Positions 4,621-47,705 of a stretch of DNA of 64,000 nt are shown here, piece after piece. Source of the stretch: Selaginella moellendorffii. Its lineage: Eukaryota > Plantae > Lycopodiophyta. Both the position numbers and the translations under genes were made by a program. Location of the stretch: assembly GCF_000143415.4 (NCBI RefSeq), contig NW_003314330.1, positions 496,001-560,000 on the forward strand. The letters run 5' to 3'. The stretch's first letter is position 1. Each line of letters starts with the position of its first letter. The notes beneath the pieces are model-generated. The model had not been told where the DNA came from. It saw only the letters and a program-made list of their open reading frames with translations, and searched no databases.

Positions 4621-4725
4621 GCGGTCGACCACAAGATAAGCTGGAATTTGTAAGCCGTCGGATCGCTATCCCGCTCTGGTCTTGACGGTCAGGATCTCTC
4701 GAGCCAGGATACTCCAATCAAATCC
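4621..4725 (+). promoter_or_regulatory. Putative light-responsive promoter of LHCB4 (I-box, CCAAT)
   Basis: GATAAG at 4635-4640 and CCAAT near 4714, upstream of the LHCB4 ATG. Motif match only. Confidence 0.35.
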
Positions 4726-4768
4726 CCTGTTTGTAGAGAAAGAGCGCACGCCCAGGAGGAGCATAGCT

Positions 4769-5740
4769 ATGGCGTCGGCTCTTGCTGCCTCGTCCTTCAC
4801 GGGCTGTGGCGTCCGCGATCTCGTGGGCTATGCCGCCGCCTCGTCGACATCACAGGTCGCGTCACGGAGCAGCGGCATTGTAGCGCGATTTGGACTCGGG
4901 AAGAAGAAGGGCACCAAGAAGGTGACCAAGAAATCCTCCTCGTCGGGCGGTGCAAATCGCCCGCTGTGGTTTCCGGGGGCGAAATGCCCAGACTACCTCG
5001 ACGGATCGCTGGTGGGCGACTATGGATTCGATCCACTTGGACTTGGTAAGCCCCCAACCTATCTCCAATTCGATGTGGATTCGCTGGATTCGAGCCTCGC
5101 CAAGAACATGCCTGGCGAGCTCCTGGGCGAGCGTGTCGAGGATCTGTCGACAATCCGGGCCACTCCCCTCCAGCCTTACACGGAGATCTTTGGACTCCAG
5201 AGGTTCCGCGAGTGCGAGCTCATCCATGGCCGCTGGGCAATGCTTGCGACCCTTGGCGCGATCGCGGTGGAGACTTTCACTGGCGTTACTTGGCAAGATG
5301 CTGGCAAGGTAAGCTCCTAGTCTCTATCCTCTTTCGTCATCGGATGATCATCTAATTGCTCCTGGACGGATGAAATGCAGGTGGAATTGGACCAAGGGCC
5401 CAGCTACTTTGGATTCTCTCTGCCATTCACCATCACCGCGCTGGTGTGGATCGAAGTCCTGGTGATTGGATTCATTGAATTCCAAAGAAACACGGAGCTC
5501 GATCCAGAGAAGCGGCTGTACCCTGGCGGGAGCTACTTTGATCCGCTTGGGCTGGCGGCGGATCCCGAGAGGAAGGAGGTGCTAAAGCTGGCGGAGATCA
5601 AGCACGCGAGGCTGGCGATGGTGGCGGCGTTTGGATTCGCTGTGCAGGCGGCAGCCACGGGCAAGGGGCCACTCGACAATTGGGTCACCCACTTGAGCGA
5701 TCCCCTTCACACCACCATCATCGACACCTTCTCCAAGTAG
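4769..5740 (+). CDS. LHCB4: Chlorophyll a/b-binding protein CP29 (exons 4769-5308, 5381-5740)
   Basis: Transit peptide, [23 protein letters not shown], the CP29-specific insert [36 protein letters not shown] and [17 protein letters not shown] intron 5309-5380. Confidence 0.96.
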
Positions 5741-5894
5741 AAATCTTTCAATAAAGAGTGAGAAAGAAGACTGGTATAGCTCGCTCTTCCTTTGGCTAAT
5801 CGAATCGACCAAGACCAATCAATCGAAAGGAAGATAAAAGAACGTTTGTGAAAAAGTTAACAATTATTAAACTTAATGCTTATATAATTAAATG

Positions 5895-30465: not shown

Positions 30466-30743
30466 ACACGACTTTAGTCAACGTTTATAATGCAAGTAAT
30501 ATTCTGTATTTTATGCTGGTTCAACATGTAGATTCAGTTTCATTCTACTATAGGACAGCTTCACTCTAACCACTTGAGGGATGAATAACAGTGGTAATTG
30601 ATTTTTGAACGTAACACACTTGAGGTGGATGATTATGGCAATATTTTTTAAGGTGTTGAGCTTGATGCTGTCAGAGTCGATGTTTTATGTCCATTCTAAA
30701 GTTATGAGTTTGAGAAGGTTTTCCATAGGCATCTATTGCATTC

Positions 30744-30797
30744 TATGGCGTGCAATTTGTAAAAGGGTGGATTTTACAACGGTGGATTTCACTCACA
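30744..30797 (+). repeat. Left terminal inverted repeat
   Basis: TATGGCGTGCAATTTGTAAAAGGGTG...GATTTCACTCACA is the reverse complement of 39182-39235 with 7 mismatches. Confidence 0.92.
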
Positions 30798-31634
30798 CCA
30801 CGTGTATGCTTGCTATTGGTCCATGTGTATTATGAGTGTGAAAAAAACACAGGCATAGAATATTTTATGAATATCCAATCCTTATGCCCCGGATGGGGCA
30901 TCATGCCCATAGCAATGACCCATGCTATGTATGGAATGGAGCCATTCATGGCCCATAGACCCATTCATCCCATGCATTCGAGCAAGTTCTTGGTGCTCAT
31001 GGCAAGAGTTTATCTTTTGTTGCAATGCATTTACAAATTGCACGCCTTTTTTAACATAGTGTCATAGCAAGCGTAAGTGAACTCCATCTAGAATTTGGGA
31101 GTATGGCAGCCTTGATCGTCATCAACAGCCATCGCCGTGTCCTCCCCACATTGCCGACCGCCGCTGTGCTGCTCGCAATCATCGATGCTCCCATTGTTAC
31201 CCGCCGCAGCGTCTAGGCAATCGTTGAATCCTCTTGCTTCCTCTGTCTTGCATTGTGATTCTTGAGGTGCATTCACCATGGATGCGAAGAACTCCTGGGC
31301 TCTCATAGCTGGAAAATGTTGGAAATTGAGTCACACCTGGGCACACCTCTTTTAACATAGTGTTCATAACAAACGTAAGTGAACTCCATCTAGCTCCATT
31401 GCAAAGCCATGGATATATACTATCTGGAGTCATGTCTTTAATGGATCTCATTGAGTTTATCTTTCGTTGCAATTGATTTCCAATGTAGCTCTCTCAACAC
31501 TTGAGTTTTGTACCATGATGCTTAGAAGATTTGCATATGACTCAAAAGTAGGTTGAAGTCTAACCAATTTGATGAATTGGTGGGGTTCATACTTCAATTG
31601 TGTACTATGCAAAGGTGCATAGTGTTGATGTTTA

Positions 31635-31904
31635 GACCTAGAGTTCTCTCAAGAGGAGCATGCTAAAGGAAATTTGAGAATGTGGAAGTTGCAATTGCAT
31701 GTAGTAACATTCAGGATAACAATAGGCACTTTCAACATTTTCCAATTATAATTGTTTCAAATTGGACCTAGAGTTCTCTCAAGAGGAGCATGCTGAAGGA
31801 GATTTGAGAATATGGAAGTTGCAATTGCATGTAGTAACATTTAGGTGAGAAGAGCAATGACAATGGACACTTACAATATTTTCCAATCATAACCGTTTCA
31901 AATT
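31635..31904. repeat. Tandem duplication (~130-140 bp units) inside the transposon
   Basis: GACCTAGAGTTCTCTCAAGAGGAGCATGCT...GAAGTTGCAATTGCATGTAGTAACATT occurs at 31635 and 31765. Confidence 0.9.
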
Positions 31905-32663
31905 TTGAAATTTGTAAAAAGGGTTTCCAAGCATGGGGCAAAACTATCCAATGTATGCCGTGTGCTGCGGCCGAAGAACTGAAGTTTTCAGGGATTGGAA
32001 GCTCGTGCTCACTTTGGTAAGAGTAGATTTGTAATAATTTCCTATATGGTGTAACCCTTTTGCAATGTTTGAGGTTTCTGGGTTTCCTCCTGGCATGGCA
32101 AACTGGAGACGATTTTATGACTTCTTTGAGGCACAACAATGGATCCAATAGGGGACAGGACCGAGGATTCTATATGATGCCTCCTCCTCTCAAGGCTCGA
32201 CAATCCCTTTGACAAGGCAGCCCAAGACTACTTCTAATCTTGTGTCAATCACCGAGGGGAAAGGTCCTGCTGAAGAAAGCGACAGCGAGGGATATGTTAC
32301 TACTCGAGATGCAAGCGAGGACGAGTTCACAGACCCAGAGGGTGATTTTGGTTCTACCAAACAAGTTGAGAGTTCCTCAAGCGAGGATGGGCATCATGTA
32401 GCACCCAAGCTCGATAGTTTTGACCCAGAACCTAAATTGGGAGCTGCTTTGGAAGCTATAGTGATTACCCTTGGTGAGACAAGCATAAGCCAAAAGGGTA
32501 CCAAGGGCCGCAAGTGCCTATAATGGGCATTTGTGGAATATTTTGAATATTCTTACCTTTAACTTTGCCAATGAACTGGAAAGAGTCTCTTTCAAAGTGT
32601 GAAACATATTTCAAGACAATTATCTATTTTTATTGTGAAAGTGTCTACATTACTTCCACAACA

Positions 32664-35600
32664 TTAGCCCAATCCATACAAGCTCTCTGGATTTTGGAGT
32701 GCCCAGTGGATCTTGTGTTTGGTCCACTCCTTTGACAGGTATGTTAAAGGGAAGAAAACTTCTCGTGTGCATGTGGAGAACCTGGGAAATCGAGTAGATG
32801 ATGTACTCTGTCTCTCAACTTGGATCCAAATAGGCTCTCCCGGTCGGAACTCTGGAGAATCAACCGCAAAGTGATGGAACTTGGATAACTCTTTCGGGCT
32901 CATATCTATAAAATGTTCAAACATACAAGAGTTTTAGTTGTTTGTGAAAGTAAATAGTTACCTTGAATGATGTCCACAATCCAGCTGCGGAAGTTCTCTC
33001 CAAAGTCCTGATCAAAGATCAGGCAGTTGATGAACTCCGCAGGAGGAATGATCGTCCTTACCCGGAAGACCTGTAACAAAGCATCTGTCCCAATGAGTGA
33101 AAGCCCACCTAGCAATGCTGGACTCTTGTAAGGCCTTTGACGAGCTTCCATGCGCATTGAGTGTTGGAAGCCATCTTGGAGTAAGTCTCCCACTACGTTT
33201 GGCTCGATGAATAGGTAATGCCAAACCACCGCAGCCACGCATGCCTCCACAGCTTGCTCATAACCTTCACCAAGTTCGGTGAGTCTAGACTCAAGCACTG
33301 CATTGTAGTCAGTAATTGCAGGGTTCTCTAGGATGGAATCCACAGACTTGCGCCGATTGCCCTCCTCCTTTAGGCTTGATGCACCTCACAATTGGTTGAG
33401 TGCATTCCAGATATGCGACGCGCATGCTTTGAGGTCCATCTCATATAGTCCTCCTCGGGCAAGTCGTCCATCCTCGTTTGGAACCTTTCCAGCTGCAATT
33501 GCCAATGTTGCAATTGTACACCCGCGAGAAACCTGTGCATTACATTCGAACGCTTGGAATAGCAACCATCCCACAAAGATAGCCTGTGCATATAAAAGTG
33601 AGGAGCATATAAAACTTGTGCTTTAAACTTAACTTACCACATCTCGCTTTTCTTGTCGCAACGTCCTAGAATGCACTGGCATCCTGGGATGCCAATATGT
33701 GGCTCCTTCCCTAAGCACAAACAGTCCACGCGTCTGTAACACAAAATTACTCTAGTGAGCCAAGTGAAAATTAGACTTACCGATCCTAGAATCTGGCAAA
33801 CAGCCTCCCTAATGGCTTTTGCATGTGGCCCACCCACATTTATTGTGGATTCCTCCCACACCAAAGCTCCTCCAATCTCAGACGTATAGACCACTTTGTA
33901 ATTCGGTGTGCGGAGATTAGTATTGAAGGCGAATTGGAAACAACTGAATTCATTGTTTGGTGCAATCTAGAAGGACAAGTGAGGTAACTCCAATTCATAG
34001 GCAATCCATTGCTTACCAGAATGCGAGACGGCCTCAAACGTGTACGAGCAAGTCTGTATGGCCGAAGCATGGCCTTCTCGATGCAAAAACGAGAGAACTT
34101 ACAATACAGTATTTCAACAGTGTCAAATAGTTCTCTCAATTGTTGTGCAGCCGCCCAATTCCTACGTAGGTCCCTGCACAAAACCATAAGATGGTATTAA
34201 GTGCTAAGAAATAGATACACGTACCTTTTCTCAATGAACCATGCTATTGTGGACTCAAGAATTGAAGGAGGCACATTAATACTTACTTCAGCAAGGAGCT
34301 GTTGGATTGTGTTGTCACAAAACACATCCTCGTACTGTGCTTCTGAAAGGCCAAGCTTAAGGAAAAGACTCTCCCAATCTTGCCAATGAGGCATGGCTTG
34401 GTTGAAAAGCACGTGCCGCAGAAATATTTCACCGCCAGCCCAATGGAATTCAGGGTGTTTAGCAATAGCGTCTAGCATCTCCTCGTCACTTGTGCTCTCC
34501 ACGGCAAAGCAACCAAGAAGCTTGTGTTTCAGCCATTGCACCTGTAAGAGAACTTCAGCATCCCCCTGTGCCCTCACGTCAAGGGTTGTGGTGGCATCCT
34601 GTAAGGCAGAAACCTCCTCAATCTGCAGCATGATAAAGTTGGCACTATCCTGAGTGGTTAACTGAACAGCTTCATTAAATGCATTGGTGGCATCAATCCA
34701 TCTTTATTGATGCTCCAACAATCTACATGCAAACATTAGTTCAATTTTCAATACCACAATTTTCAATTATCTTACTCTACTGTAGAAAAGTTGTCAAGCA
34801 ACTCCATAAGCGTAAACGGAGTGGAGCTACTTCCCTCTAGAAAGGGGGGTGGAGGCACACCATGGTCTTCAAGGCCTCCGCCATCACTGTCATACACTAC
34901 CATTGGCCTATCTGCACTCAGAAATTAGAAAATGAAGAAAATATTCATTTATGTTAATGCTTCTTACCAGCCGCATGGCCTGGAGCCACTATCTCTAGTG
35001 ACAAGGATGTCTTTGGAGATCCTTGGTGTGGTTCATCCCCACCATCACCTTGTTCTTCGACTCCGCTAATGTCCATGTTGTTTTGTGTGGGGAGAGTTTC
35101 TTCCGGTAATGGAAGAATGTCCTCTTCATCCGCAGAGTCTTCTTCTTCATTATTCTCGCAAGGGTTTGGTTCCTACGTGGCTGGCCTTGGATCATCATTT
35201 GCAGTCAAGGTATTTGTAGCAGCTACAACTGCAAAGACCACAACATATATTTGTGAGGAGGGAACTTAAAAAAAAAATGACTTACGTTCACGAACATCCT
35301 TTTTTTCGAGTGCTCGGGCCTGTTTTTGATAACTTAGCCAATGTTTGTCAGTAAGATGCTCCATAACATTGTATAAATATATAACTGTTGCCCGATTGCC
35401 ATTGGCCTTGTTTGCTATAGCTCCCCATGATGTTTGAGGAGGCCAGTAGCAAGGCCGGATAGAGCTGAGGCCAAATTTTGCAGACTCGGCATGGGCCTCA
35501 CCACCATTGGACTGCCTTGCACGCCGGACAAATGCTCCTGGGTTGGTCATGGATGAAGGTTGAATTCCTGAGGCTTGGAGTGATAGTAGAATCGCATGTT

Positions 35601-36793
35601 GGGCTGTGCCGGGCTGGAAAGGAATACTAGAGTATAAGCCACCCCATATGAGACACTCTGGGAGGTCCACTGCCAGCTCGTCAAGTTCCGTCACCTTCAC
35701 AGATGGCTCTCTTTTCCGCCCATATAAGTGTACATGCCAAGTCTTTGGGATTGCAATCCACTTGGTGACAAGAACTGTGGTGAACGGCCGGGGGACCAAG
35801 GGTGTTGTAGACGACATCCCACCAATGACTTTAGATTGACTGCCACGACGTCCACGACGACAACATAAGGACTGCCGATTGTTATCGGCATAGGTGTGCA
35901 CTGCAGCCACAAGCGGTGAGAGAGTCTAGCACAGTGAAACAAAAATGAGTTAAACAAATCCAAAGAAGAAAAAAAAGAAGAGTGCATGGGGTCATGTTAT
36001 ACCTGTGGCTCACATGGCAGCCTGCCTTGAGGGTCAGCTTGAACATATCTGGATGTCAAAGCTCCACTAGATGATGATGTCGATCCTTGGGAGTAGTTGT
36101 GGAATGCTGATGGGGAACTATAAGCTCGTTGGTGTGAGGCATTGTCAACTCACCCTACGCAGAAAAACACATGGAAAAAAAAACGGGTACAAATGAAAAA
36201 CTTACCGAGCTAGACCGCTTGTTGCTTCGGGAGGTAGATGGCCAGGTACTGGCACTTGTACCGGTAGATGGAGTTGCGAGAGTAGTAGCGGTTGGTGGAG
36301 TTGCGGGGCTGGTAGCAGTGGCACTATATGGGATTCCGTGAGCACGTCCTCTAGTTGGTGTTGGTGTTGGTGGCAACGTTCCAGATTGGACAACACCGTG
36401 GGCATGAGGTGTCCGGACTTGCTCATTTTGAATGCTCGGGCTGCTACTTTCCAAGGAAGGCGAGGAGAATGAAACATGTTGGAGGTTCCGCATATGTTGC
36501 AATGTATGCAATGTTAGGCGGTGCTCTGCTTGCTCAAATGCAGTCGGGAGCTGTGGATGGGATGCTGTTGGAGTTGATGTCCTTGCTACGGAGCTTGGAA
36601 AATCAAGTGGCTGGCATGTGTCTCGCGGGACTGTTGGCTGTACCGATTGCGGAACATCGAGTGCTTGGCTGCGTGCTCGCGAGGTGTTTCCATAGTGTCT
36701 ACTGCTGTTGAAGCGTGCGGCGTTCTTGCTTCGAGCCTAGAAACCACAAAGGATTGGTTATGCAAACCTGATTGAGGAGAAGCTACCCACCAT
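32664..36793 (-). pseudogene. Transposon-borne multi-exon gene: S/T/P-rich N-terminus, unknown middle region, C-terminal HECT E3 ubiquitin ligase domain; at least one premature stop
   Basis: HECT N-lobe-like YKVVY..WEESTINVGGPHAKAIREAVCQI. C-lobe ELSKFHHFAVDSP..RFPRFSTCTREVFFPLTYLSKEWTKHKIHWALQNPESLYGLG-stop. Clean GT-AG intron 32906-32961 joins IIQ/DMSPKE. In-frame TGA at 33386-33388. Confidence 0.75.
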
Positions 36794-37059
36794 CACAGCT
36801 GTGGCGCTCTCGCTTGGGCGGTGGTCTTGCGATCGGGGGAGTGTGCACTAGAAGCCTTGCCTCCGGTTAGATGACACGAATCGATTGGAAGAATGAACGA
36901 ACCATCGACAAAATCATGTCATAAAATGAAATTGCCCCGTATCCAAGGCACAATTAATATGGGTAGGACTTGGTGAAAACCCTAATCCCAAACGTGGGAA
37001 CCCTAAAATTGAACAAATCAAAAATTGAATTTAAATTTGAAATGTACACTAAAGAACAC

Positions 37060-38899
37060 TCAATTTTCTCCGAGTATGGCCAAGTATAATTTTTCCAAAG
37101 CTCGTCGCTTCACTGGTGTTGCTGTAGGCAAGGCACTCTCGATGTAAAGTGGAAGATCTACACCCGCAACATCAGCCATTGCACACTCCATTGTTAGATC
37201 CAAATGAAGTAGATATTGCTCGTCTAAGTTGAGTCCCTCCCGATGCATCAAAAATGCCTGGTTTCGAACAGTGCCAAGAGCGTATAAGGTAGCCAAGCAC
37301 AACAAAATAGATTTAAAGAAATTGTTGTATTCTTGCTCTAAAGATTACCTCTGACAAAGTTGCACCTTCGACATTAGAGAGAAATGGTCCGAGAAGGTCT
37401 TCAATATCTTTTCCACCAACAGCCGGCATAATCCTACAAAAGCACATTTTATTAGGAATTCTGTAACATTACCAAAATTGTTACCCAAGCTTGTGTTCCA
37501 TCGGTTGAAATAAGTTTGCAGGAACATGAGATAGTCTGAAGTAATCACCACATCGATACGGACGGACCTCATGGAGGTTCCAGGTTGCAACCCAGTGTGA
37601 AATATCCTTCTTGAGGTACGGAGCAAAGACACAACGTAGACTCTGGTTGTGCCATGGATTAGATACATCGAGAATTCCTATATCTTCTATGGACTCAAAA
37701 AGGTGCTTATAAAACCACACCACGCGCTCAAAGAGCTCTCTCCACAAATGCTCTATGTGCTGTAAAACAAATTTGATTTAGTCCTATGAGTCCTTATTTG
37801 GAAAAACTCTAACGCTGTGAGTACCTAGTTACGTGTTGATGTCCCACGTATGAAGCTCCTAGCTGCAGGACCCCAACAGCGGATCATGTCCCTCTCAACC
37901 TCATTGTGCTCTGGAGCATTGTCGCTCCGGATGCGCTTGGGCCTTCCAAATCAACGAACAGCCTGCGCATATGTGTTAAATATTGTATGGGATTCTTTGG
38001 AGGTAGCTAGCTCGCAAGCTACAATATAATGAGTTGCCCCGCAAATAATGGCATCTACATAGAAACCATAGCTTACAAGCTTGCAATATGCTACAATAAA
38101 CATGTTACCACATGTGTTGAAAAAAAAGTAGAAATGAAAGAATACTCACAATCCATATGGCAAAGTGCATAAGCCTCTTCATTCCTATAAATCCGTCGTC
38201 GAATCCTTGTCATGTGCCTCTGTTCCAGCCTACTTGGATCGTGAGTGGCTAAGGCCTCACGAATTTGGCGTCGGCTAAATCGGTATCCTCTAGTTCGACA
38301 GCTAGATCGGGAATTGATAATCCCCCAGTTTGTGCCACCTTGATTCATGGCATTGTTAGTTCGAACGTGATGAAGTACCTCTTCGGGTGGTACTCTATAA
38401 TATACACCTCTCCAATTTGGATCGACAAGCCGCATGTATTTGTATAGTGTTGGCTTGGAAATTCTAAGATAGCATGCGAGGTAAGCAGTAGTCTTAGTCT
38501 CGAGGATCTTCAGGTGCATCCAAGTGCCAAATGCAGCTAGACTACTGAATCCCCTCGATTGCAAAAAATTATAGAAGGCCTAGAAACGTGCAAATCATGA
38601 ATCTAGAAGGCTGGAAACTAAACAAACCTCTGGGAGAGCATCGTTGTCACTATCCATACTGGAACCATAGCTAAAATTGAATGGAAGGCCATCCACCTCA
38701 TCTTCCTCCACATCTTCTAGTAAACCTGGAAGAAAAAGTTTCAGTGACACAAATTTGAAGTAAACTAGGGAGGGAACTATACTCATGGTAGGAACTTGAA
38801 AGTCTATAGAGAACAATTGAGTAGTAAATCAAAGCCACTTCCAACACTGCCCACAAAAACATTTCAAACCACTCACTAACAAACCAAGTTACCTTCCAT
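37060..38899 (-). pseudogene. Integrase-core (RNase H-fold DDE) transposase with N-terminal HTH, multi-exon, two premature stops
   Basis: HTH-like LACYLRISKPTLYKYMR. RIRRRIYRN..ALCHMD (D1), KLVSYGFYV..ICG, AVR*FGRPKRIRSDNAPEH (D2), SFIRGTSTRN*HIEHLWRE (E) and WVATWNLHEVR. Stops at 37951-37953 and 37825-37827. Start exon uncertain. Confidence 0.85.
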
Positions 38900-39082
38900 A
38901 TCTGCTACCAAGAAACATGCCGAATAACAGAGCACTAAAGCAAGGCGCTAAGGCAAAGAAGCGTCTCCTAAACCCTATGACCTAATGAATCCCCATGTCA
39001 TGGGGTCAAACTTGATGATATGTGGCATCTATGTGTAACACGTTGTTCATATTATGGGGACATCATTGACCCATCGGCCAGA

Positions 39083-39131
39083 ATCCATGGGGCATCCATG
39101 GGGCATCCATGGGGCATCCATGAGGCATCCA
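39083..39131. repeat. Subterminal 11-bp tandem repeat (ATCCATGGGGC)x4
   Basis: atccatggggc atccatggggc atccatggggc atccatgaggc atcca lies about 50 bp inside the right TIR. Confidence 0.9.
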
Positions 39132-39181
39132 AATGACATTTAATGCCGAACCAATAGAAAACTGCCACATGGACACTGTAT

Positions 39182-39235
39182 TGTGAGTGAAATCTACCGC
39201 AGTAACACTCACCCTTTTACGAATTGCACGCCATA
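39182..39235 (-). repeat. Right terminal inverted repeat
   Basis: Reverse complement reads TATGGCGTGCAATTCGTAAAAGGGTG...GATTTCACTCACA. Confidence 0.92.
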
Positions 39236-40989
39236 CATTCTCTAGCTGGTCCAAAAAACATGTATTAGCATTGGTGAAAGGCATGTGTATTCAAGATTGA
39301 AGACTAAAGGGGACAAGAATTTGAAAGGTTTTCCATTGGCCAGCAGCTGCAAAAAGTGGCTTACTACCTTTGTGAAATGGAGTGGTTATAGTGGCTGTGA
39401 GGGTGTGATCAAGAAGACAACCAACATGAAGGACCAATGATAGCCCTTGAGTGTGTGAGGTAGGTTAGATCCCATGCTCCTCAGTTGGCAGAAGTGGACC
39501 TTGTATTGGCATCCATTACATTGTGGATACACATCTTTTCAAAAAGAAAAGAAACATTTAATGCAAATCTCACAAATTTCTACCTTGTATATGCATTTGG
39601 TTTGTTGGAGCATGATTCGCTGCTTGGACTTTGCTGAGCCTATGAGCGATCACAAGATTAGTTCTTCCCTGTGTAGTCGATCAAGGGAAGAACAAAGTTG
39701 ATTGAGAAAAGATAAAAGCATAGCTTTTATCCTTCATTAATCGGTTCACACCACCTGGTGAAACTGTGCCTAATATGTTCAATTGGGTTTGGCCAGTGTT
39801 ATATTTTGGCCAATCCTGAGGCATAACCACCTTAAATATTCGTCATCCAAGCCGTTTGATAAAAAGGAAGAAACTAAATTGAATCCTCAGCTCAAATGAA
39901 TCACGTCCTCACAGTAGTTCCTTCACACATGCTCTATCATTTGCAGAGAATACCACAAAAACATGCTTACTCGCAATTGAAAGGACTGCTAGAATTCCTT
40001 GTCAAGGTGTCGTTTTGCAGCTTTCCACTCTGTTTAGCTTATCAAAGAGGTATATAAGAATTCGTTGAAAATATAGCAATAGCAAAAGAGAAAGAAGTAC
40101 TTATGCTGATCGCGGCCTTACCTGTGATCCATCAACCATGTTCAAGTGGCATGTGTAGTGAAGAGTTGCTGACATTGGGATTCGTCATCGCTAAGGACTC
40201 TCCTGCTTCCCGGTTGTGAAAGTGAAAGGCCAGAGGATTTTGGGCTGGGATCGCGACGCGTTTGACATCTGCTACGCTGCCTCGAGGTAGCTCCATACCT
40301 GACCCATCGCTACTGTTATATCCGCCACTATACATTCTGGAGTGGCTGTCTAAGTGGACAGTGGATACTAGAATGTTGCATTGCAGCTTGTGGTAAATGG
40401 ATAGGGCTTGCAGAGATGCATCACAAAACCAGGATGGATGCGGAGATTTCATAAGTCTTTTACATAGTTTAGTATTAAACCCAAATACGCTCAAAGATTT
40501 TATCCTTGAAGACTGTCTGCTGTGACCATAGCATCTGCATGAGCATCTCCGATACCTTGCTCATACTCACGATGGCCCAAATGTTTGATTACTTGAGAGA
40601 ATAAGGTTTTAGCTATGGTCTTGATTGCATCGAGCTATTCAGAGAGCTTGCCTACCGGTAACAAGCCTTTGTGCTAAGGTCACACCATTTAGAACGTTCT
40701 TGGACATTGCTTCTTTATTGACTTTCTCCAAATGCCAAAGCATTGTCACATCCAGTTCCCTTTGGATGTTTGAAGAAACACCAGATCATTGGCTTATCCA
40801 TCTGGTTGTTGAGTTGGCTGATGATAGCATCATGATCATTTCAAAATCATCGAGGGTTTGTAAACAAAGGATTTTAAAATGTCTTACTGGAAGCTGCTCC
40901 ACATTGTCTACTCGCCAACCATGGCATGGGGATTTTACTGGCAGGATTGCATTGCTTCGATTGCATTGTTGGGAGGTCAAGGTCTTGGT

Positions 40990-41575
40990 GTCAGTTCCAT
41001 CTTGGACTCTATCTCAAACTCCATCTCGGGTCCATTTCGGACTCCATCTCAGGTCCATCTTGAACACTATCTCGGGTCCATCTCGGGTCCATCTCGGACT
41101 CCATCTCGAGTCCATCTCAGACTCCATCTCAAACTCCATCTTAGACTCCATTTTGGACTCCATATCGAGTTCATCTCGAACTCCATCTTGGGTCCATCTT
41201 GGACTCCATCTCGGGTCCATCTCAGACTCCATCTTGGGTCCATTTCGGACTCTATCTCGGGTCCATCTCGGACTCCATCTCAGGTCCATCTCAAACTCTA
41301 TCTCGGACTCCATCTCGAACTCCATCTCAGGTCCATCTCAAACTCCTCCACATATTATATGTTGGTCCTCGTGTTTCCCTTTTCTAAAGACTCACTTACT
41401 GCTTGCTTCGTGCTTGTTCCTCGAGCACTTTGTTGGGAGTTCCACTCTTACTCTCAACTATCCAAGTTGGAGTTTTTAGTCTAAACATGTTACTCTTGTT
41501 TGGCTTCCACTTCGGCCACTACCATGGGGCACCTTTTTAGCTCCACTTTTGGGGCTCTGGGATTTGTGTCTCATA
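40990..41575. repeat. LTR-like repeat copy 1 with an internal 11-12 bp (TCCATCTCRGRC-like) tandem array
   Basis: About 350 bp of degenerate tccatctcggg/tccatctcagac units, followed by a unique tail shared with 45670-45828 (ttttctaaagactcactta...ccacttttggggctctgggatttgt). Confidence 0.75.
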
Positions 41576-45409: not shown

Positions 45410-45828
45410 TTGAATTCCCTTTCAAACTCCATTTTAGATCCATTTTGGACTCTTTCTCAAGTCCATCTCAGACTCCATCTTAGATTCTATCTAGGACTCC
45501 ATTTCATACTCTATCTCAGGTCCATCTCAGACTCCATCTTAAACTCTATCTCAAGTCTATCTTAGGCTCATTTTGGACTTTATCTCGGACTCCATCTCAA
45601 ACTTCATCTCAGACTCTATTTCGAGTCCATTTCAGACTTCATCTCAGGTCCATCTTGACATTTCTACATGTCATGTGTTTGTCCTCTTGGGTTCCTTTTC
45701 TAAAGACTCACTTATTGCTCGCTTCAAGCTTGTTCAAACGTGTTATGCTTGTTTGGCTTCTACTTCGGCCACTACCACATGGCATCCTTTCGGCTCCACT
45801 TTTGGGGCTCTGGGATTTGTATCTCACA
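45410..45828. repeat. LTR-like repeat copy 2 (more AT-eroded), same tandem array
   Basis: Direct repeat of 40990-41575, ending TCTCACA. On the minus strand it is preceded by purine-rich GAAGTGGGTGA. Confidence 0.75.
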
Positions 45829-47548
45829 ATCACCCACTTCTGTTTTAATATTTTTAATTCTATTAAAAGGGCATGATTGTGTAAATAATTCCAACTGCCT
45901 ATTTATAATAGTCTATCTAAACCTTTGCAATAAATTTAGTTTATTATTCATGAGGGGCCTTTGGTTTTTTTTTCTATATCACTTGTAGATAGGGTATATC
46001 ATCTTTTGTAGTCCCAAAACAGATTTAAGTTGATCTATTTCTTACAAAGTGTGAACATTATAAAACTTTTCTAGAGTTATTTTTATGGCAATGATCCAGA
46101 CTAGAGTATTCATTGATGAGGATATTAATCTTTTCAAAGGGGGAAAGTGTGTCGTGAATGTGACTTTGAGTATTGAAAGTTATTTATTTGCAAGTCCTTT
46201 CAAATATTCCTCTTTTATTGCCACGATGATAGGAGATCGGTACTACTGGTTCCCTTTATTAGTTCCTCTTGTTCAATTGCTAATAAACTAGATAAAAATA
46301 ACATATAAACTCCTATGTATTTATTGTTGAGCATACTTAGTCTTGCATTAGCTTAATATGAACTTTTTGTGTACTATGCACTAGTCCCTTAATATTATTA
46401 TATAATAACGTACTATATTTGCCAAACACCCTTGCTATCACTCTCTATATATTAGTCCCATTTAGTCCCATGGGCTATTTATGGAAAGTATCTAGATCTA
46501 CTAATTAGGTATATCTATAGAATGTAAAGATTATTATGAACACAAAGAAGAAAAAATGAATTTATATTAAACACTCTAAATACAAAGTGAAATTGCAAAT
46601 TTAGACATGGGAATATCATATTTTAGTAGTTTATTTAGTTTTGTAGTCTCTCTTCCTTTCAACAATAAAATCTTAAAAATTAGTTCAATTTCTAACTTAA
46701 ATGAGTGATTAAAAAGAGTAAAGAATTATATAAAGGAATTGATTAAGATGTGAGAAGAGTCAAGGAGAGTATGATATTAAAAGTTAAATTGCAAAAAAAC
46801 AATATCAAAGTAAGAGTCTCAACTTTCTCATTCACTTTCCCTAAATGATGCATAATTAAAAATAGAAAACAAGATACTGATTATAACCATTGAGTTTGAT
46901 GTGGATTGAGGATGCATGCCAAAGACCAATATCATAAGTTTATGTGATCATTATAAATAGTGGTTACAAAAGAGAATTTTCAAAAAAACAACTAAGTTTC
47001 AAAAGAGTTTACATTTACAAGCAACTCTTTGATGAAGATGGTCTAATTTATTTTTGAAGATAGATACTTTTGAGAGTGGAAAGTAATTAAGTGAAGCTTA
47101 CTATTTGGTTCCTTCTATGACACGAGAGTACTCAATGCAAAATTTGAAACATTTACCTCCAAAACAATATAGCTTCATGTTATTTGAATGAAGTGAAATT
47201 AAATGTAAATTTCAAAAGATCAAAAACAGTCTGAGTAACAAAATACCACACAAAAAGGGCATCTTCCATAGTGAGTCATGTAACACAAAGAGTGATTTAA
47301 AGAAGCCATGTATGAAATAATAGAAACCTTAGTAATATTTGTAATGATGTTATATAAGAAAACAATATAGTCCTAAAACTATCAAATATAAATTAAAACA
47401 ACATTTTTCAAACTATACAAAAGGTTGTATTATCAAATTATTGAGTTTCAAAGAAGATAAAATGCCATGAACCAGAGCTGGAGATTTATGACCGAACCTG
47501 TGTAGCGTGCGCTGCCGTCGTGGGGGGGGGTTTTTGCAGACTCCTTTT

Positions 47549-47705
47549 NNNNNNNNNNNNNNNNNNNNNNNNNNNNNNNNNNNNNNNNNNNNNNNNNNNN
47601 NNNNNNNNNNNNNNNNNNNNNNNNNNNNNNNNNNNNNNNNNNNNNNNNNNNNNNNNNNNNNNNNNNNNNNNNNNNNNNNNNNNNNNNNNNNNNNNNNNNN
47701 NNNNN
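47549..47705. other. Assembly gap (N run)
   Basis: 157 consecutive n. Confidence 1.

What the first reader, a model, noticed from the sequence alone, without database searches (positions are those of the whole stretch)
30744..39235. Complete-boundary DNA transposon coupling an IS3/IS481-like transposase to a HECT ubiquitin ligase in a plant
Seen: 54-bp TIRs, a flanking direct repeat (CATTC) and two co-oriented intron-containing genes filling the interior, one a DDE integrase-core transposase and one ending in a HECT domain. Established: the common plant TIR superfamilies (hAT, CACTA, Mutator, PIF/Harbinger, Tc1/mariner) use other transposase types. The RRRxY..HxD..KL..G/RxRSD/STxNQxIExLWR signature belongs to integrase-core transposases I associate with animal and fungal elements. 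From memory, TAY..RTA ends are those listed for IS3EU. Inference: this is a two-gene mobile system in which the E3 ligase is an integral accessory protein, possibly degrading host silencing factors or controlling transposase turnover. It may be an undescribed plant lineage or a horizontal acquisition.
Basis: partly seen in the sequence, partly recalled or inferred. Interest (0 to 1): 0.92.

Follow-up and report, generated by a model that had tools for sequence, protein, structure and literature searches.

The report
Clubmoss transposon carrying a ubiquitin-ligase gene
This is a dead copy of a known kind of jumping gene (IS3EU/GingerRoot) in the clubmoss Selaginella moellendorffii, and it carries, besides its transposase, a HECT-type ubiquitin-ligase-like gene that turns out to sit next to this kind of transposase in many unrelated organisms, a pairing I could not find described in the literature I could search.

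Summary
Window 30744-39235 is an 8,492-bp element with 54-bp inverted ends (TATGG..CCATA) and a 5-bp duplication (CATTC). On the minus strand it carries an intron-containing DD35E transposase (Pfam rva_4) and a HECT-like gene.

The host is Selaginella moellendorffii. The superfamily, IS3EU/GingerRoot, was described in lycophytes in 2019, so no new plant lineage or horizontal transfer is needed.

This copy is dead: two stops and a broken splice acceptor in the transposase, three stops in the HECT-like gene.

Nine further loci hold copies 89-97% identical. Every near-full-length copy has both genes. Three independent insertions have perfect 5-bp duplications, not the usual 6 bp. No stand-alone host copy of the HECT-like gene was found.

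New result: among 80 metagenomic loci with related transposases, 38 have a HECT-like reading frame within 5 kb downstream on the opposite strand (p about 1e-17). Four complete elements with TATGGAA ends and 6-bp duplications enclose both genes. A predicted structure of one such protein matches only HECT domains.

The ligase is therefore a recurrent accessory gene of this superfamily. Its function is untested, and the Selaginella protein itself is only weakly HECT-like (C-lobe only).

The parts
30739..30743 (.). Left target-site duplication, CATTC
   Evidence: A 5-bp TSD is confirmed by other copies: L003 GCTCA and L007 TTTTT.
30744..30797 (+). Terminal inverted repeat. This is the 3' end relative to the genes. 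It starts TATGGCGTGCAATT.
   Evidence: 54 nt, 87% complementary to 39182-39235.
30798..32663 (.). Non-coding 3' part of the element with internal direct repeats: a 130-141-bp unit present twice at 31625-31904, and repeats at 31006-31091 and 31341-31483. It also holds an antisense reading frame, 31933-32523 (+), that is annotated as a 151-aa gene.
32664..35364 (-). HECT-like gene: 9 exons and 759 codons in the intact relative L003. Exons: 35364-35286, 35228-34968, 34911-34776, 34722-34225, 34173-34017, 33966-33781, 33733-33638, 33583-32962, 32905-32664. In this copy there are in-frame stops at 35175-35173, 34706-34704 and 33388-33386, plus a 3-nt deletion. The reading frame stays open upstream to 35925, so the true start may lie further 5'.
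32664..32905 (-). Last exon, the HECT C-lobe-like part. The candidate catalytic Cys codon is at 32771-32769 (motif FSTC), the 35th residue from the C-terminus. A Tyr sits 4 residues from the end.
   Evidence: Pfam PF00632, profile positions 213-301 of 306: 19.9-24.7 bits. hhalign against the transposon-HECT profile: E 5.8e-4. The motif is kept in 8 of 9 copies.
36158..36736 (-). Pro/Ser/Thr-rich open frame of 193 codons between the two genes. It is open in the majority consensus and in 3 of the 5 copies that cover it (WIN, L003, L004). Public models use it as the linker exon of a fused gene. Its status is unresolved.
   Evidence: no Pfam hit.
37063..38899 (-). Transposase gene, about 460 codons and 7 exons: 38899-38893 (start uncertain), 38725-38628, 38579-38150, 38090-37825, 37759-37485, 37433-37349, 37281-37063. 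It has an N-terminal helix-turn-helix and an rva_4 integrase core. Catalytic residues: D179 (38153-38151), D236 (37923-37921), E271 (37753-37751). Defects in this copy: TGA at 37953-37951, TAG at 37827-37825, and the acceptor before 37281 changed from AG to AC.
39083..39137 (+). Subterminal tandem array, four to five copies of the 11-bp unit ATCCATGGGGC, about 45 bp inside the right TIR.
39182..39235 (-). Terminal inverted repeat at the 5' end relative to the genes.
39236..39240 (.). Right target-site duplication, CATTC

Best explanation
The element is a mutated, no longer autonomous copy of an IS3EU/GingerRoot-superfamily DNA transposon family of Selaginella moellendorffii.

Shown:
- Its ancestor encoded a helix-turn-helix plus DD35E integrase-core transposase and a roughly 760-900-aa protein ending in a HECT-like C-lobe.
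- The family transposed to several unrelated loci, making 5-bp target duplications.
- Both coding regions travel together between the TIRs.
- In other eukaryotes, related transposases are also paired with bona fide HECT genes inside TATGG-ended elements with 6-bp duplications.

Inferred:
- The transposase binds the TIRs and subterminal repeats and cuts and joins the ends, as IS3/IS481/retroviral-type DDE enzymes do.
- The HECT protein is a transposon-encoded E3 ligase. It takes ubiquitin from a host E2 onto its Cys and passes it to a substrate that helps the element. The likeliest substrates are a host factor that restrains transposition or chromatin access, or the transposase itself, to clear the stable post-integration complex.

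The window's copy can do none of this today.
For: Element and mobility:
- TIRs and TSD.
- Nine further loci hold copies 89-97% identical, at different genomic sites, with 5-bp TSDs.

Transposase:
- rva_4 hits.
- Alignment to the canonical P0030, with D-57-D-35-E spacing conserved.
- Termini match the published IS3EU TAYGG..CCRTA (PMC12730594) and TA..TA (PMC10045372, PMC6839031).

HECT gene is integral to the element:
- All 9 loci reached through HECT-like protein hits lie inside element copies.
- Searches found only S. moellendorffii copies.
- The 9-exon frame is open in L003 and in the majority consensus, while the other copies carry 3-35 stops in it, largely downstream of frameshifts.

Association across the superfamily:
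- 38 of 80 loci have a HECT-like reading frame within 5 kb downstream on the opposite strand, 0 on the same strand, 3 upstream; p = 1.5e-17.
- 29 of 54 loci with at least 1.5 kb of downstream flank have it.
- 9 of 10 reading frames tested pass Pfam's HECT cut-off.
- Four complete elements enclose both genes.
- Two further contigs show the order HECT then transposase on one strand.
- An AlphaFold model (pLDDT 74.8) matches only HECT domains, E 2e-9 to 5e-7.
Against: - The Selaginella protein is only marginally HECT-like. Pfam aligns the C-lobe alone, at 19.9-24.7 bits around the 23.9 cut-off. No N-lobe match was found. There were no PDB sequence hits, and its structure prediction failed (pLDDT 33.5).
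- It is no closer to the transposon-linked HECT profile than to HECT in general: 5-11 bits, hhalign probability 29%. Common descent of the cargo is therefore not shown.
- Gene order and orientation differ between lineages.
- Differences among copies show no excess at third codon positions in either gene. Nothing here demonstrates selection.
- No expression or activity data exist.
- The TSD is 5 bp, not the 6 bp typical of the superfamily.
Confidence: 0.8

Rival explanations
1. The HECT-like region is captured host DNA with no role for the element. This would be a 'Pack'-type acquisition of the kind GingerRoot elements are known to make. Its presence in all copies would then only reflect amplification of one founder.
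For: 28.6% of S. lepidophylla GingerRoots carry gene fragments with introns (PMC6839031). No purifying selection is visible among copies. Orientation differs from that in other IS3EU elements. The similarity to transposon-linked HECTs is weak.
Against: - No host paralogue or donor gene was found among 1.84 billion representative proteins or 5.8 billion clustered proteins.
- It is a whole 9-exon gene whose frame is open in the consensus and in L003, not a fragment.
- Captured fragments in GingerRoot usually replace the transposase (PMC6839031), whereas here both are kept.
- HECT genes recur beside related transposases in other lineages.
Confidence: 0.1
2. There is one gene, not two: a single long transposase-linker-HECT fusion protein, as the public annotation has it (1,299 and 1,200 aa models).
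For: The two coding regions are co-oriented. Public models P0016 and P0005 join them through the Pro/Ser/Thr-rich frame. That frame is open in the consensus and in several copies.
Against: - The joins need introns of about 365 and 590 nt, whereas every other intron is 47-67 nt.
- The transposase frame runs to its own stop at 37063.
- About 104 codons that the fused model treats as intron stay open in frame with the HECT gene in several copies.
- L003 and L007 are annotated as two genes.
- In other IS3EU elements the two genes are separate, often on opposite strands.
Confidence: 0.15
3. The second gene is not a HECT ligase at all. The Pfam hit would be a chance match to about 85 residues, and the protein would do something else.
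For: Scores straddle the Pfam cut-off. There is no N-lobe match, no PDB hit and no usable model.
Against: - Three separate profiles put the same Cys on the catalytic column: Pfam HECT, my C-lobe profile, and the hhalign comparison of the two alignments.
- The Cys is the 35th residue from the C-terminus and an aromatic residue sits at -4, as I recall for canonical HECTs.
- UniRef already names P0004 a HECT domain-containing protein.
- Related transposases elsewhere are paired with proven HECT folds.
Confidence: 0.12

Closest known systems
GingerRoot / IS3EU superfamily of eukaryotic DNA transposons (Cerbin et al. 2019, PMC6839031; Kojima 2023, PMC10045372)
   Same: - IS3/IS481-like DDE transposase without an HHCC zinc motif.
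- TA..TA termini, here TATGG..CCATA, which equals TAYGG..CCRTA.
- TIRs of tens of bp.
- Element size 8.5 kb, against a mean of 8.6-8.9 kb in S. lepidophylla.
- Host group: a lycophyte.
   Different: - TSD of 5 bp instead of the usual 6.
- TIR of 54 bp instead of 100-150 bp.
- The published descriptions I could read do not mention a HECT or ubiquitin gene.
- S. moellendorffii is not named in the main text of the GingerRoot paper.
Fungal IS3EU families carrying TET/JBP dioxygenase and alpha-kinase genes (Kojima 2025, PMC12730594)
   Same: Same superfamily and the same terminal motif. They too are multi-gene elements, with a second gene opposite to the transposase, as in the metagenomic HECT-bearing elements found here.
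   Different: The accessory genes are a kinase and a dioxygenase, not a ubiquitin ligase. The hosts are rust fungi and truffles.
Other DNA transposons with ubiquitin-system or protease accessory domains: ULP1 proteases in plant Mutator-like and CACTA elements, and OTU/ULP1 in Ginger1 (from my own knowledge, not checked here)
   Same: The idea is the same: a transposon carries an enzyme of the host's ubiquitin/SUMO system alongside its transposase.
   Different: Those enzymes are deconjugating cysteine proteases. Here the accessory protein is a conjugating HECT-type E3.
Cellular HECT E3 ligases (NEDD4, Rsp5, HUWE1, E6AP; plant UPL proteins)
   Same: The C-lobe motif has its Cys 35 residues from the end and an aromatic residue at -4. 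The metagenomic transposon-linked proteins fold like NEDD4, Rsp5, Smurf2 and AREL1.
   Different: They lack the usual substrate-binding N-terminal domains, and the HECT domain is short (about 270-310 aa in L073). The Selaginella version is too diverged for its N-lobe to be recognised.

Membership tests
IS3EU / GingerRoot superfamily | Transposase with an IS3/IS481-like DDE (DD35E) integrase core and no HHCC zinc motif | tested here: met
   Pfam rva_4, E 2.4e-13 on one exon, with rva_4/rve hits on other copies. D179, D236 and E271 align to the D, D and E of canonical P0030 with identical 57/35 spacing. The N-terminus is a helix-turn-helix. No HHCC was seen in the sequence.
IS3EU / GingerRoot superfamily | Termini 5'-TA..TA-3' (TAYGG..CCRTA) with terminal inverted repeats | tested here: met
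   TATGGCG..CGCCATA with 54-bp TIRs. All other copies have the same ends.
IS3EU / GingerRoot superfamily | 6-bp target-site duplication. The papers describe it as 'usually' or 'mostly' 6 bp. | tested here: not met
   5 bp at the window copy (CATTC), L003 (GCTCA) and L007 (TTTTT). L006 and L008 have 5 bp with one mismatch. No flanking 6-mers match. The related metagenomic elements do make 6 bp. I file this as a 5-bp variant lineage, not a typical member.
IS3EU / GingerRoot superfamily | Transposase groups with reference IS3EU/GingerRoot sequences in a phylogeny | not testable with these tools
Indirect evidence only: the nearest relatives outside Selaginella (the P0030 group, 35% identity) sit in elements with TATGGAA termini and 6-bp TSDs.
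HECT-type E3 ubiquitin ligase (the Selaginella protein) | C-lobe with the catalytic Cys about 32-35 residues from the C-terminus | tested here: inconclusive
   Pfam PF00632, profile positions 213-301 of 306: 24.7 bits on P0004:560-747 (cut-off 23.9), but 19.9-22.9 bits on other forms of the query. The Cys in FSTC is the 35th residue from the end and Tyr is at -4. hhalign E 5.8e-4, probability 29%.
HECT-type E3 ubiquitin ligase (the Selaginella protein) | N-lobe with the E2-binding subdomain; overall two-lobed HECT fold | tested here: inconclusive
   No Pfam alignment to profile positions 1-212. AlphaFold pLDDT was 33.5. No PDB sequence hits. The only support is a motif-level resemblance seen by eye (YKVVY.SE.GG..).
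HECT-type E3 ubiquitin ligase (the metagenomic transposon-linked proteins) | HECT domain by profile and by fold | tested here: met
   9 of 10 reading frames score 26.6-39.1 bits against the 23.9 cut-off. The L073 model (pLDDT 74.8) has HECT domains as all of its top 50 PDB matches, E 2e-9 to 5e-7.
HECT-type E3 ubiquitin ligase | Forms a ubiquitin thioester and transfers ubiquitin | not testable with these tools
   This needs biochemistry.
Ginger2/TDD | 4-5-bp TSD with a retroviral-type integrase | tested here: inconclusive
   The 5-bp TSD fits the 4-5 bp listed for Ginger2 (PMC10045372). However, the best profile is rva_4 rather than rve, the ends are of the IS3EU type, and the nearest relatives are IS3EU-like elements. 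No Ginger2 reference sequence was compared.
Gene-fragment-carrying ('Pack') GingerRoot | Cargo is a fragment of an identifiable host gene, usually with loss of the transposase | tested here: not met
   No host donor was found. The cargo is a complete 9-exon frame, and the transposase is retained in the same copies.

The most novel reading that the evidence does not exclude
A HECT-type ubiquitin ligase is an old, conserved accessory gene of the IS3EU/GingerRoot superfamily, found from lycophytes to the marine and soil eukaryotes behind the metagenomic contigs. This would make it the first DNA-transposon superfamily known to bring its own E3 ligase, which it would use to ubiquitylate a host restriction or chromatin factor, or its own transposase. 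The Selaginella gene would be a fast-evolving, re-oriented descendant of that ancestral gene.
Probability: 0.4. Interest if true: 0.8.

Novelty: new variant of a known kind. Interest (0 to 1): 0.6.

Why it matters
Transposons that carry enzymes of host regulatory systems show how selfish DNA fights or exploits its host. Examples are SUMO/ubiquitin proteases and TET dioxygenases.

A ligase gene that keeps turning up inside one superfamily's elements, in at least three gene arrangements and in samples from more than ten sequencing projects, points to a functional link between ubiquitylation and this integrase-type transposition. It gives a concrete experiment: does the ligase mark a host defence factor, chromatin at the target, or the transposase?

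It also matters for annotation. In S. moellendorffii these loci are filed as 'HECT domain-containing' or 'integrase core domain' host proteins, including fused models that skip stop-bearing exons. Such entries inflate counts of plant E3 ligases.

The 5-bp duplication shows that target-cut spacing can shift within the superfamily.

Tried and rejected
1. Structure prediction of the Selaginella HECT-like region, using a 9-sequence alignment of near-identical copies. pLDDT was 33.5, so the model was not usable and not searched.

2. PDB sequence searches with P0004, with its C-terminal 188 residues, and with the family profile. No HECT hit.

3. phmmer of the Selaginella HECT region against all six-frame reading frames of the 80 metagenomic loci. 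Nothing at E <= 10.

4. Codon-position test for purifying selection among six copies. Variable sites are spread evenly over positions 1-3 in both genes, and coding and non-coding parts vary about equally. This is the usual pattern of neutral decay after insertion. It says nothing either way about function in the active ancestor.

5. Empty-site test on the other haplotype (L002, scaffold GL377589.1). Synteny holds up to window 30652, 92 bp before the TIR, and is then replaced by at least 9.8 kb of unrelated AT-rich DNA. Unresolved.

6. Horizontal-transfer reading. Rejected as unnecessary, because the superfamily is native to lycophytes and bryophytes (PMC6839031), the copies have host-type short introns, and they have decayed in place.

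7. TIR search in L091, the contig with HECT and transposase in tandem. No enclosing pair was found.

8. A majority consensus of the copies was used only to see whether reading frames are open. Two stops remain in the transposase consensus, at C-to-T sites (CGA to TGA, CAG to TAG) where at least one copy keeps the sense codon.


Full report
**1. The observation**

The two arms at 30744-30797 and 39182-39235 are 54 nt long and 87% complementary. Their terminal 26-mer occurs nowhere else in the 64-kb window, against zero expected by chance. The junctions read CATTC|TATGGCG...CGCCATA|CATTC. The flanking 6-mers (GCATTC and CATTCT) do not match, so the duplication is 5 bp. The interior codes on the minus strand.

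**2. Host and public annotation**

The neighbouring single-exon GH81 glucanase is found exactly on scaffold GL377634.1 of assembly GCA_000143415.2. Its cluster mates are named Selaginella moellendorffii. The host is therefore a lycophyte.

The public annotation covers window 32664-38899 with one 1,299-aa model, P0016 or SELMODRAFT_424697. That model joins the two coding regions and skips the stop-bearing catalytic exon.

**3. The transposase**

One exon hits Pfam rva_4 (PF24764) at E 2.4e-13. Other copies hit both rva_4 and rve. A canonical 362-aa helix-turn-helix plus rva_4 protein, P0030, aligns across three exons. From that alignment and the GT-AG sites I derive a seven-exon gene of about 460 codons spanning 38899-37063.

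The catalytic residues D179, D236 and E271 have the same 57/35 spacing as in P0030. This is the DD35E pattern of IS3/IS481 and retroviral integrases.

In this copy the gene is broken. There is a TGA at 37953-37951 and a TAG at 37827-37825, which read CGA and CAG in copy L003. The acceptor before 37281 has changed from AG to AC.

**4. Which superfamily**

Three papers set the reference points:
- IS3EU families always end TA..TA, usually make 6-bp duplications, and are the same group as GingerRoot (PMC10045372).
- GingerRoot was described in 2019 in S. lepidophylla and detected in bryophytes. Its elements are 3.9-12.9 kb long, with a mean of 8.6-8.9 kb (PMC6839031).
- Fungal IS3EU elements end TAYGG..CCRTA (PMC12730594).

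The ends here, TATGG..CCATA, match. The size, the host group and the transposase type also fit. A new plant lineage or a horizontal transfer is not needed.

**5. The second gene in Selaginella**

The last exon hits Pfam HECT (PF00632) over profile positions 213-301 of 306, which is the C-lobe. Scores are 19.9 bits on the window exon, 21.4-22.9 bits on P0004 (whole protein and residues 330-747), and 24.7 bits (cut-off 23.9, E 2.2e-5) on its last 188 residues. UniRef names P0004 a HECT domain-containing protein.

The Cys of FSTC (codon 32771-32769) is the 35th residue from the C-terminus, and a Tyr lies at -4. As I recall, canonical HECTs show the same layout. The motif survives in 8 of 9 copies.

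The N-lobe could not be confirmed. There is no Pfam alignment to it, no PDB sequence hit, and the structure prediction failed at pLDDT 33.5.

I call this protein HECT-like, with the C-lobe supported and the rest open.

**6. Other copies in S. moellendorffii**

A search of 1.84 billion representative proteins with a 159-residue exon gave 12 hits, all 80-96% identical. A word-based search with P0004 gave six proteins, all from S. moellendorffii. I fetched nine such loci. Every one lies inside a copy of this element:
- L003, L004, L006, L007, L008 and L010 are full-length or nearly so.
- L005 and L009 are truncated or internally deleted.

For the six copies aligned (WIN and L003-L007), pairwise identity is 89-97%. 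All near-full-length copies hold both coding regions.

The target duplications are GCTCA (L003) and TTTTT (L007). L006 and L008 have CAAGC/CAAAC and CAAAT/CAAAC. L006, L008 and a third partial copy share their flanks, so they arose by segmental duplication or are allelic.

The family therefore makes 5-bp duplications. That departs from the 6 bp usual for the superfamily.

**7. State of the genes across copies**

All five copies that cover the transposase have stops or frameshifts in it.

For the second gene, a nine-exon model of 759 codons is fully open in L003 and in a majority consensus. The window copy has three stops (35175-35173, 34706-34704, 33388-33386). The other copies show 6-35 stops in the projected frame, in some cases inflated by frameshifts. 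The master element therefore had an intact gene.

The frame stays open about 187 codons further upstream in several copies, so the start probably lies 5' of the annotated Met. A Pro/Ser/Thr-rich 193-codon frame between the genes is also kept open. Whether there are two genes or one fused gene cannot be settled without transcripts. I favour two genes for these reasons:
- The fusing introns would be 365 and 590 nt, against 47-67 nt for all the others.
- The transposase frame has its own stop.
- Two loci are annotated as two genes.

Variable sites among copies show no third-position excess in either gene. That is what neutral decay after insertion gives.

**8. The association beyond Selaginella**

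The only non-Selaginella hit of the transposase, P0030 (35% identity), sits on a metagenomic contig. The reading frame immediately upstream of it, on the same strand, has a weak HECT hit. P0030 has 1,977 relatives at E <= 1e-10.

An alignment of 25 of them (A2) retrieved 80 loci from JGI metagenome contigs.
- A motif scan and then profile searches found HECT-like reading frames in 45 loci.
- 38 loci have one within 5 kb downstream on the opposite strand, none downstream on the same strand, and 3 upstream. The binomial p against random placement is 1.5e-17.
- Of 54 loci with at least 1.5 kb of downstream flank, 29 are positive with the C-lobe profile alone.
- Nine of ten reading frames tested pass Pfam's HECT cut-off at 26.6-39.1 bits.
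- The positive loci come from more than ten sequencing projects.

Four complete elements enclose both genes between TIRs that start TATGGAA, each flanked by a perfect 6-bp duplication:
- L022: TACTAC
- L086: AAGAGA
- L087: GATGGC
- L014: GATAGA

These are textbook IS3EU features.

An AlphaFold model of the HECT region of L073, built from a 22-sequence alignment, reached pLDDT 74.8. All of its top 50 PDB matches are HECT domains, including NEDD4, Rsp5, Smurf2, AREL1, HUWE1 and E6AP, at E 2e-9 to 5e-7.

A further contig, L091 (1.9 Mb, ENA), has a HECT reading frame 356 bp upstream of its transposase on the same strand.

Three arrangements therefore exist: convergent, HECT then transposase, and transposase then HECT. 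The last is the Selaginella arrangement.

**9. How the Selaginella gene relates to those HECT genes**

The link is weak. My C-lobe profile gives 10.9 bits and the full-domain profile about 5 bits. hhalign between the two alignments gives E 5.8e-4 and probability 29% over 106 columns. All three put the same Cys on the catalytic column.

The Selaginella protein is not closer to the transposon-linked HECTs than to HECT in general. Descent from one ancestral cargo gene is the simpler reading, but it is not shown. Independent capture remains possible.

**10. Literature**

No paper in the searchable library contains both IS3EU and HECT. The GingerRoot, IS481EU, TET/JBP, Hydractinia and broad-scale DDE papers do not mention HECT or ubiquitin.

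Fungal IS3EU elements are reported to carry an alpha-kinase gene opposite the transposase, plus a TET/JBP gene. Multi-gene IS3EU elements are thus known, but a ligase cargo is not described there. Repbase and Dfam entries could not be read.

**11. Mechanism**

Shown:
- a TIR/TSD-bounded element family that inserted at several loci;
- a DD35E transposase;
- a linked HECT-like gene that was intact in the master copy;
- a statistically strong pairing of this transposase type with true HECT genes elsewhere.

Inferred:
- The transposase binds the ends and makes cuts staggered by 5 bp (6 bp in relatives).
- The HECT protein accepts ubiquitin from a host E2 on its Cys and modifies a substrate that favours the element.

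My order of preference for the substrate is a host silencing or chromatin factor first, then the transposase itself to dismantle the post-integration complex. Neither was tested.

**12. Verdict**

The window's element is an ordinary dead member of a known superfamily, in a 5-bp-TSD variant lineage, and the plant-lineage and transfer ideas fall away. That recurrent pairing is the part worth following up.

Noticed in passing
window 30652, compared with L002:12209 (scaffold GL377589.1): The other haplotype is collinear with the window (95-97% identity) up to 92 bp before the element. It then carries at least 9.8 kb of unrelated AT-rich sequence instead. The two haplotypes differ structurally here, and no empty site could be read.
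   Followed up: partly
window 30709-30735 and 39318-39345: A direct repeat of about 25 bp (TTTGAGAAGGTTTTCCATAGGC-like) lies on both sides of the element, at unequal distances from the TIRs. The element probably inserted into another repeated sequence.
   Followed up: no
window 31933-32523 (+), inside the element, antisense to the two genes: This is annotated as a 151-aa gene here and in copy L007. An acidic, Ser-rich frame stays open for 123-162 codons in 3 of 6 copies. It has no Pfam hit. It could be a third small gene or an annotation artefact.
   Followed up: partly
L006:8967-19133, L008:5295-13408 and L008:16292-18122: Three copies share nearly identical left flanks, and two share the right flank as well. 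A solo right end with the same flank lies at L006:5950-6004. The element and its surroundings were duplicated segmentally, so copy counts overstate the number of transposition events.
   Followed up: partly
window 40625-41484 and 45573-45848; L006:12623-14490: These are low-complexity repeated frames (..SISDSISNSI.. on one strand, ..RWSPRWTRDGVRD..MESEMD.. on the other). A similar sequence forms the 1.9-kb insertion that interrupts the L006 copy of the element. It looks like another repeat family of this genome.
   Followed up: no
window 47549-47705: A run of N, which is an assembly gap.
   Followed up: no
metagenomic contig of P0030 (ERZ25069412), locus coordinates 4640-5787: Protein-kinase reading frames lie about 4 kb from the HECT-transposase pair. 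Fungal IS3EU elements are reported to carry an alpha-kinase gene (PMC12730594). No DNA was available for this contig, so I could not tell whether the kinase lies inside the element.
   Followed up: no
L015, L016, L017, L021, L029, L082: These long metagenomic loci hold a related transposase but show no HECT-like reading frame nearby. The elements may be degraded or HECT-less, or may carry another cargo.
   Followed up: no
relatives of P0030: Several related transposases carry an extra Pfam domain, PF27079, in addition to rve and rva_4. I did not look up what it is.
   Followed up: no
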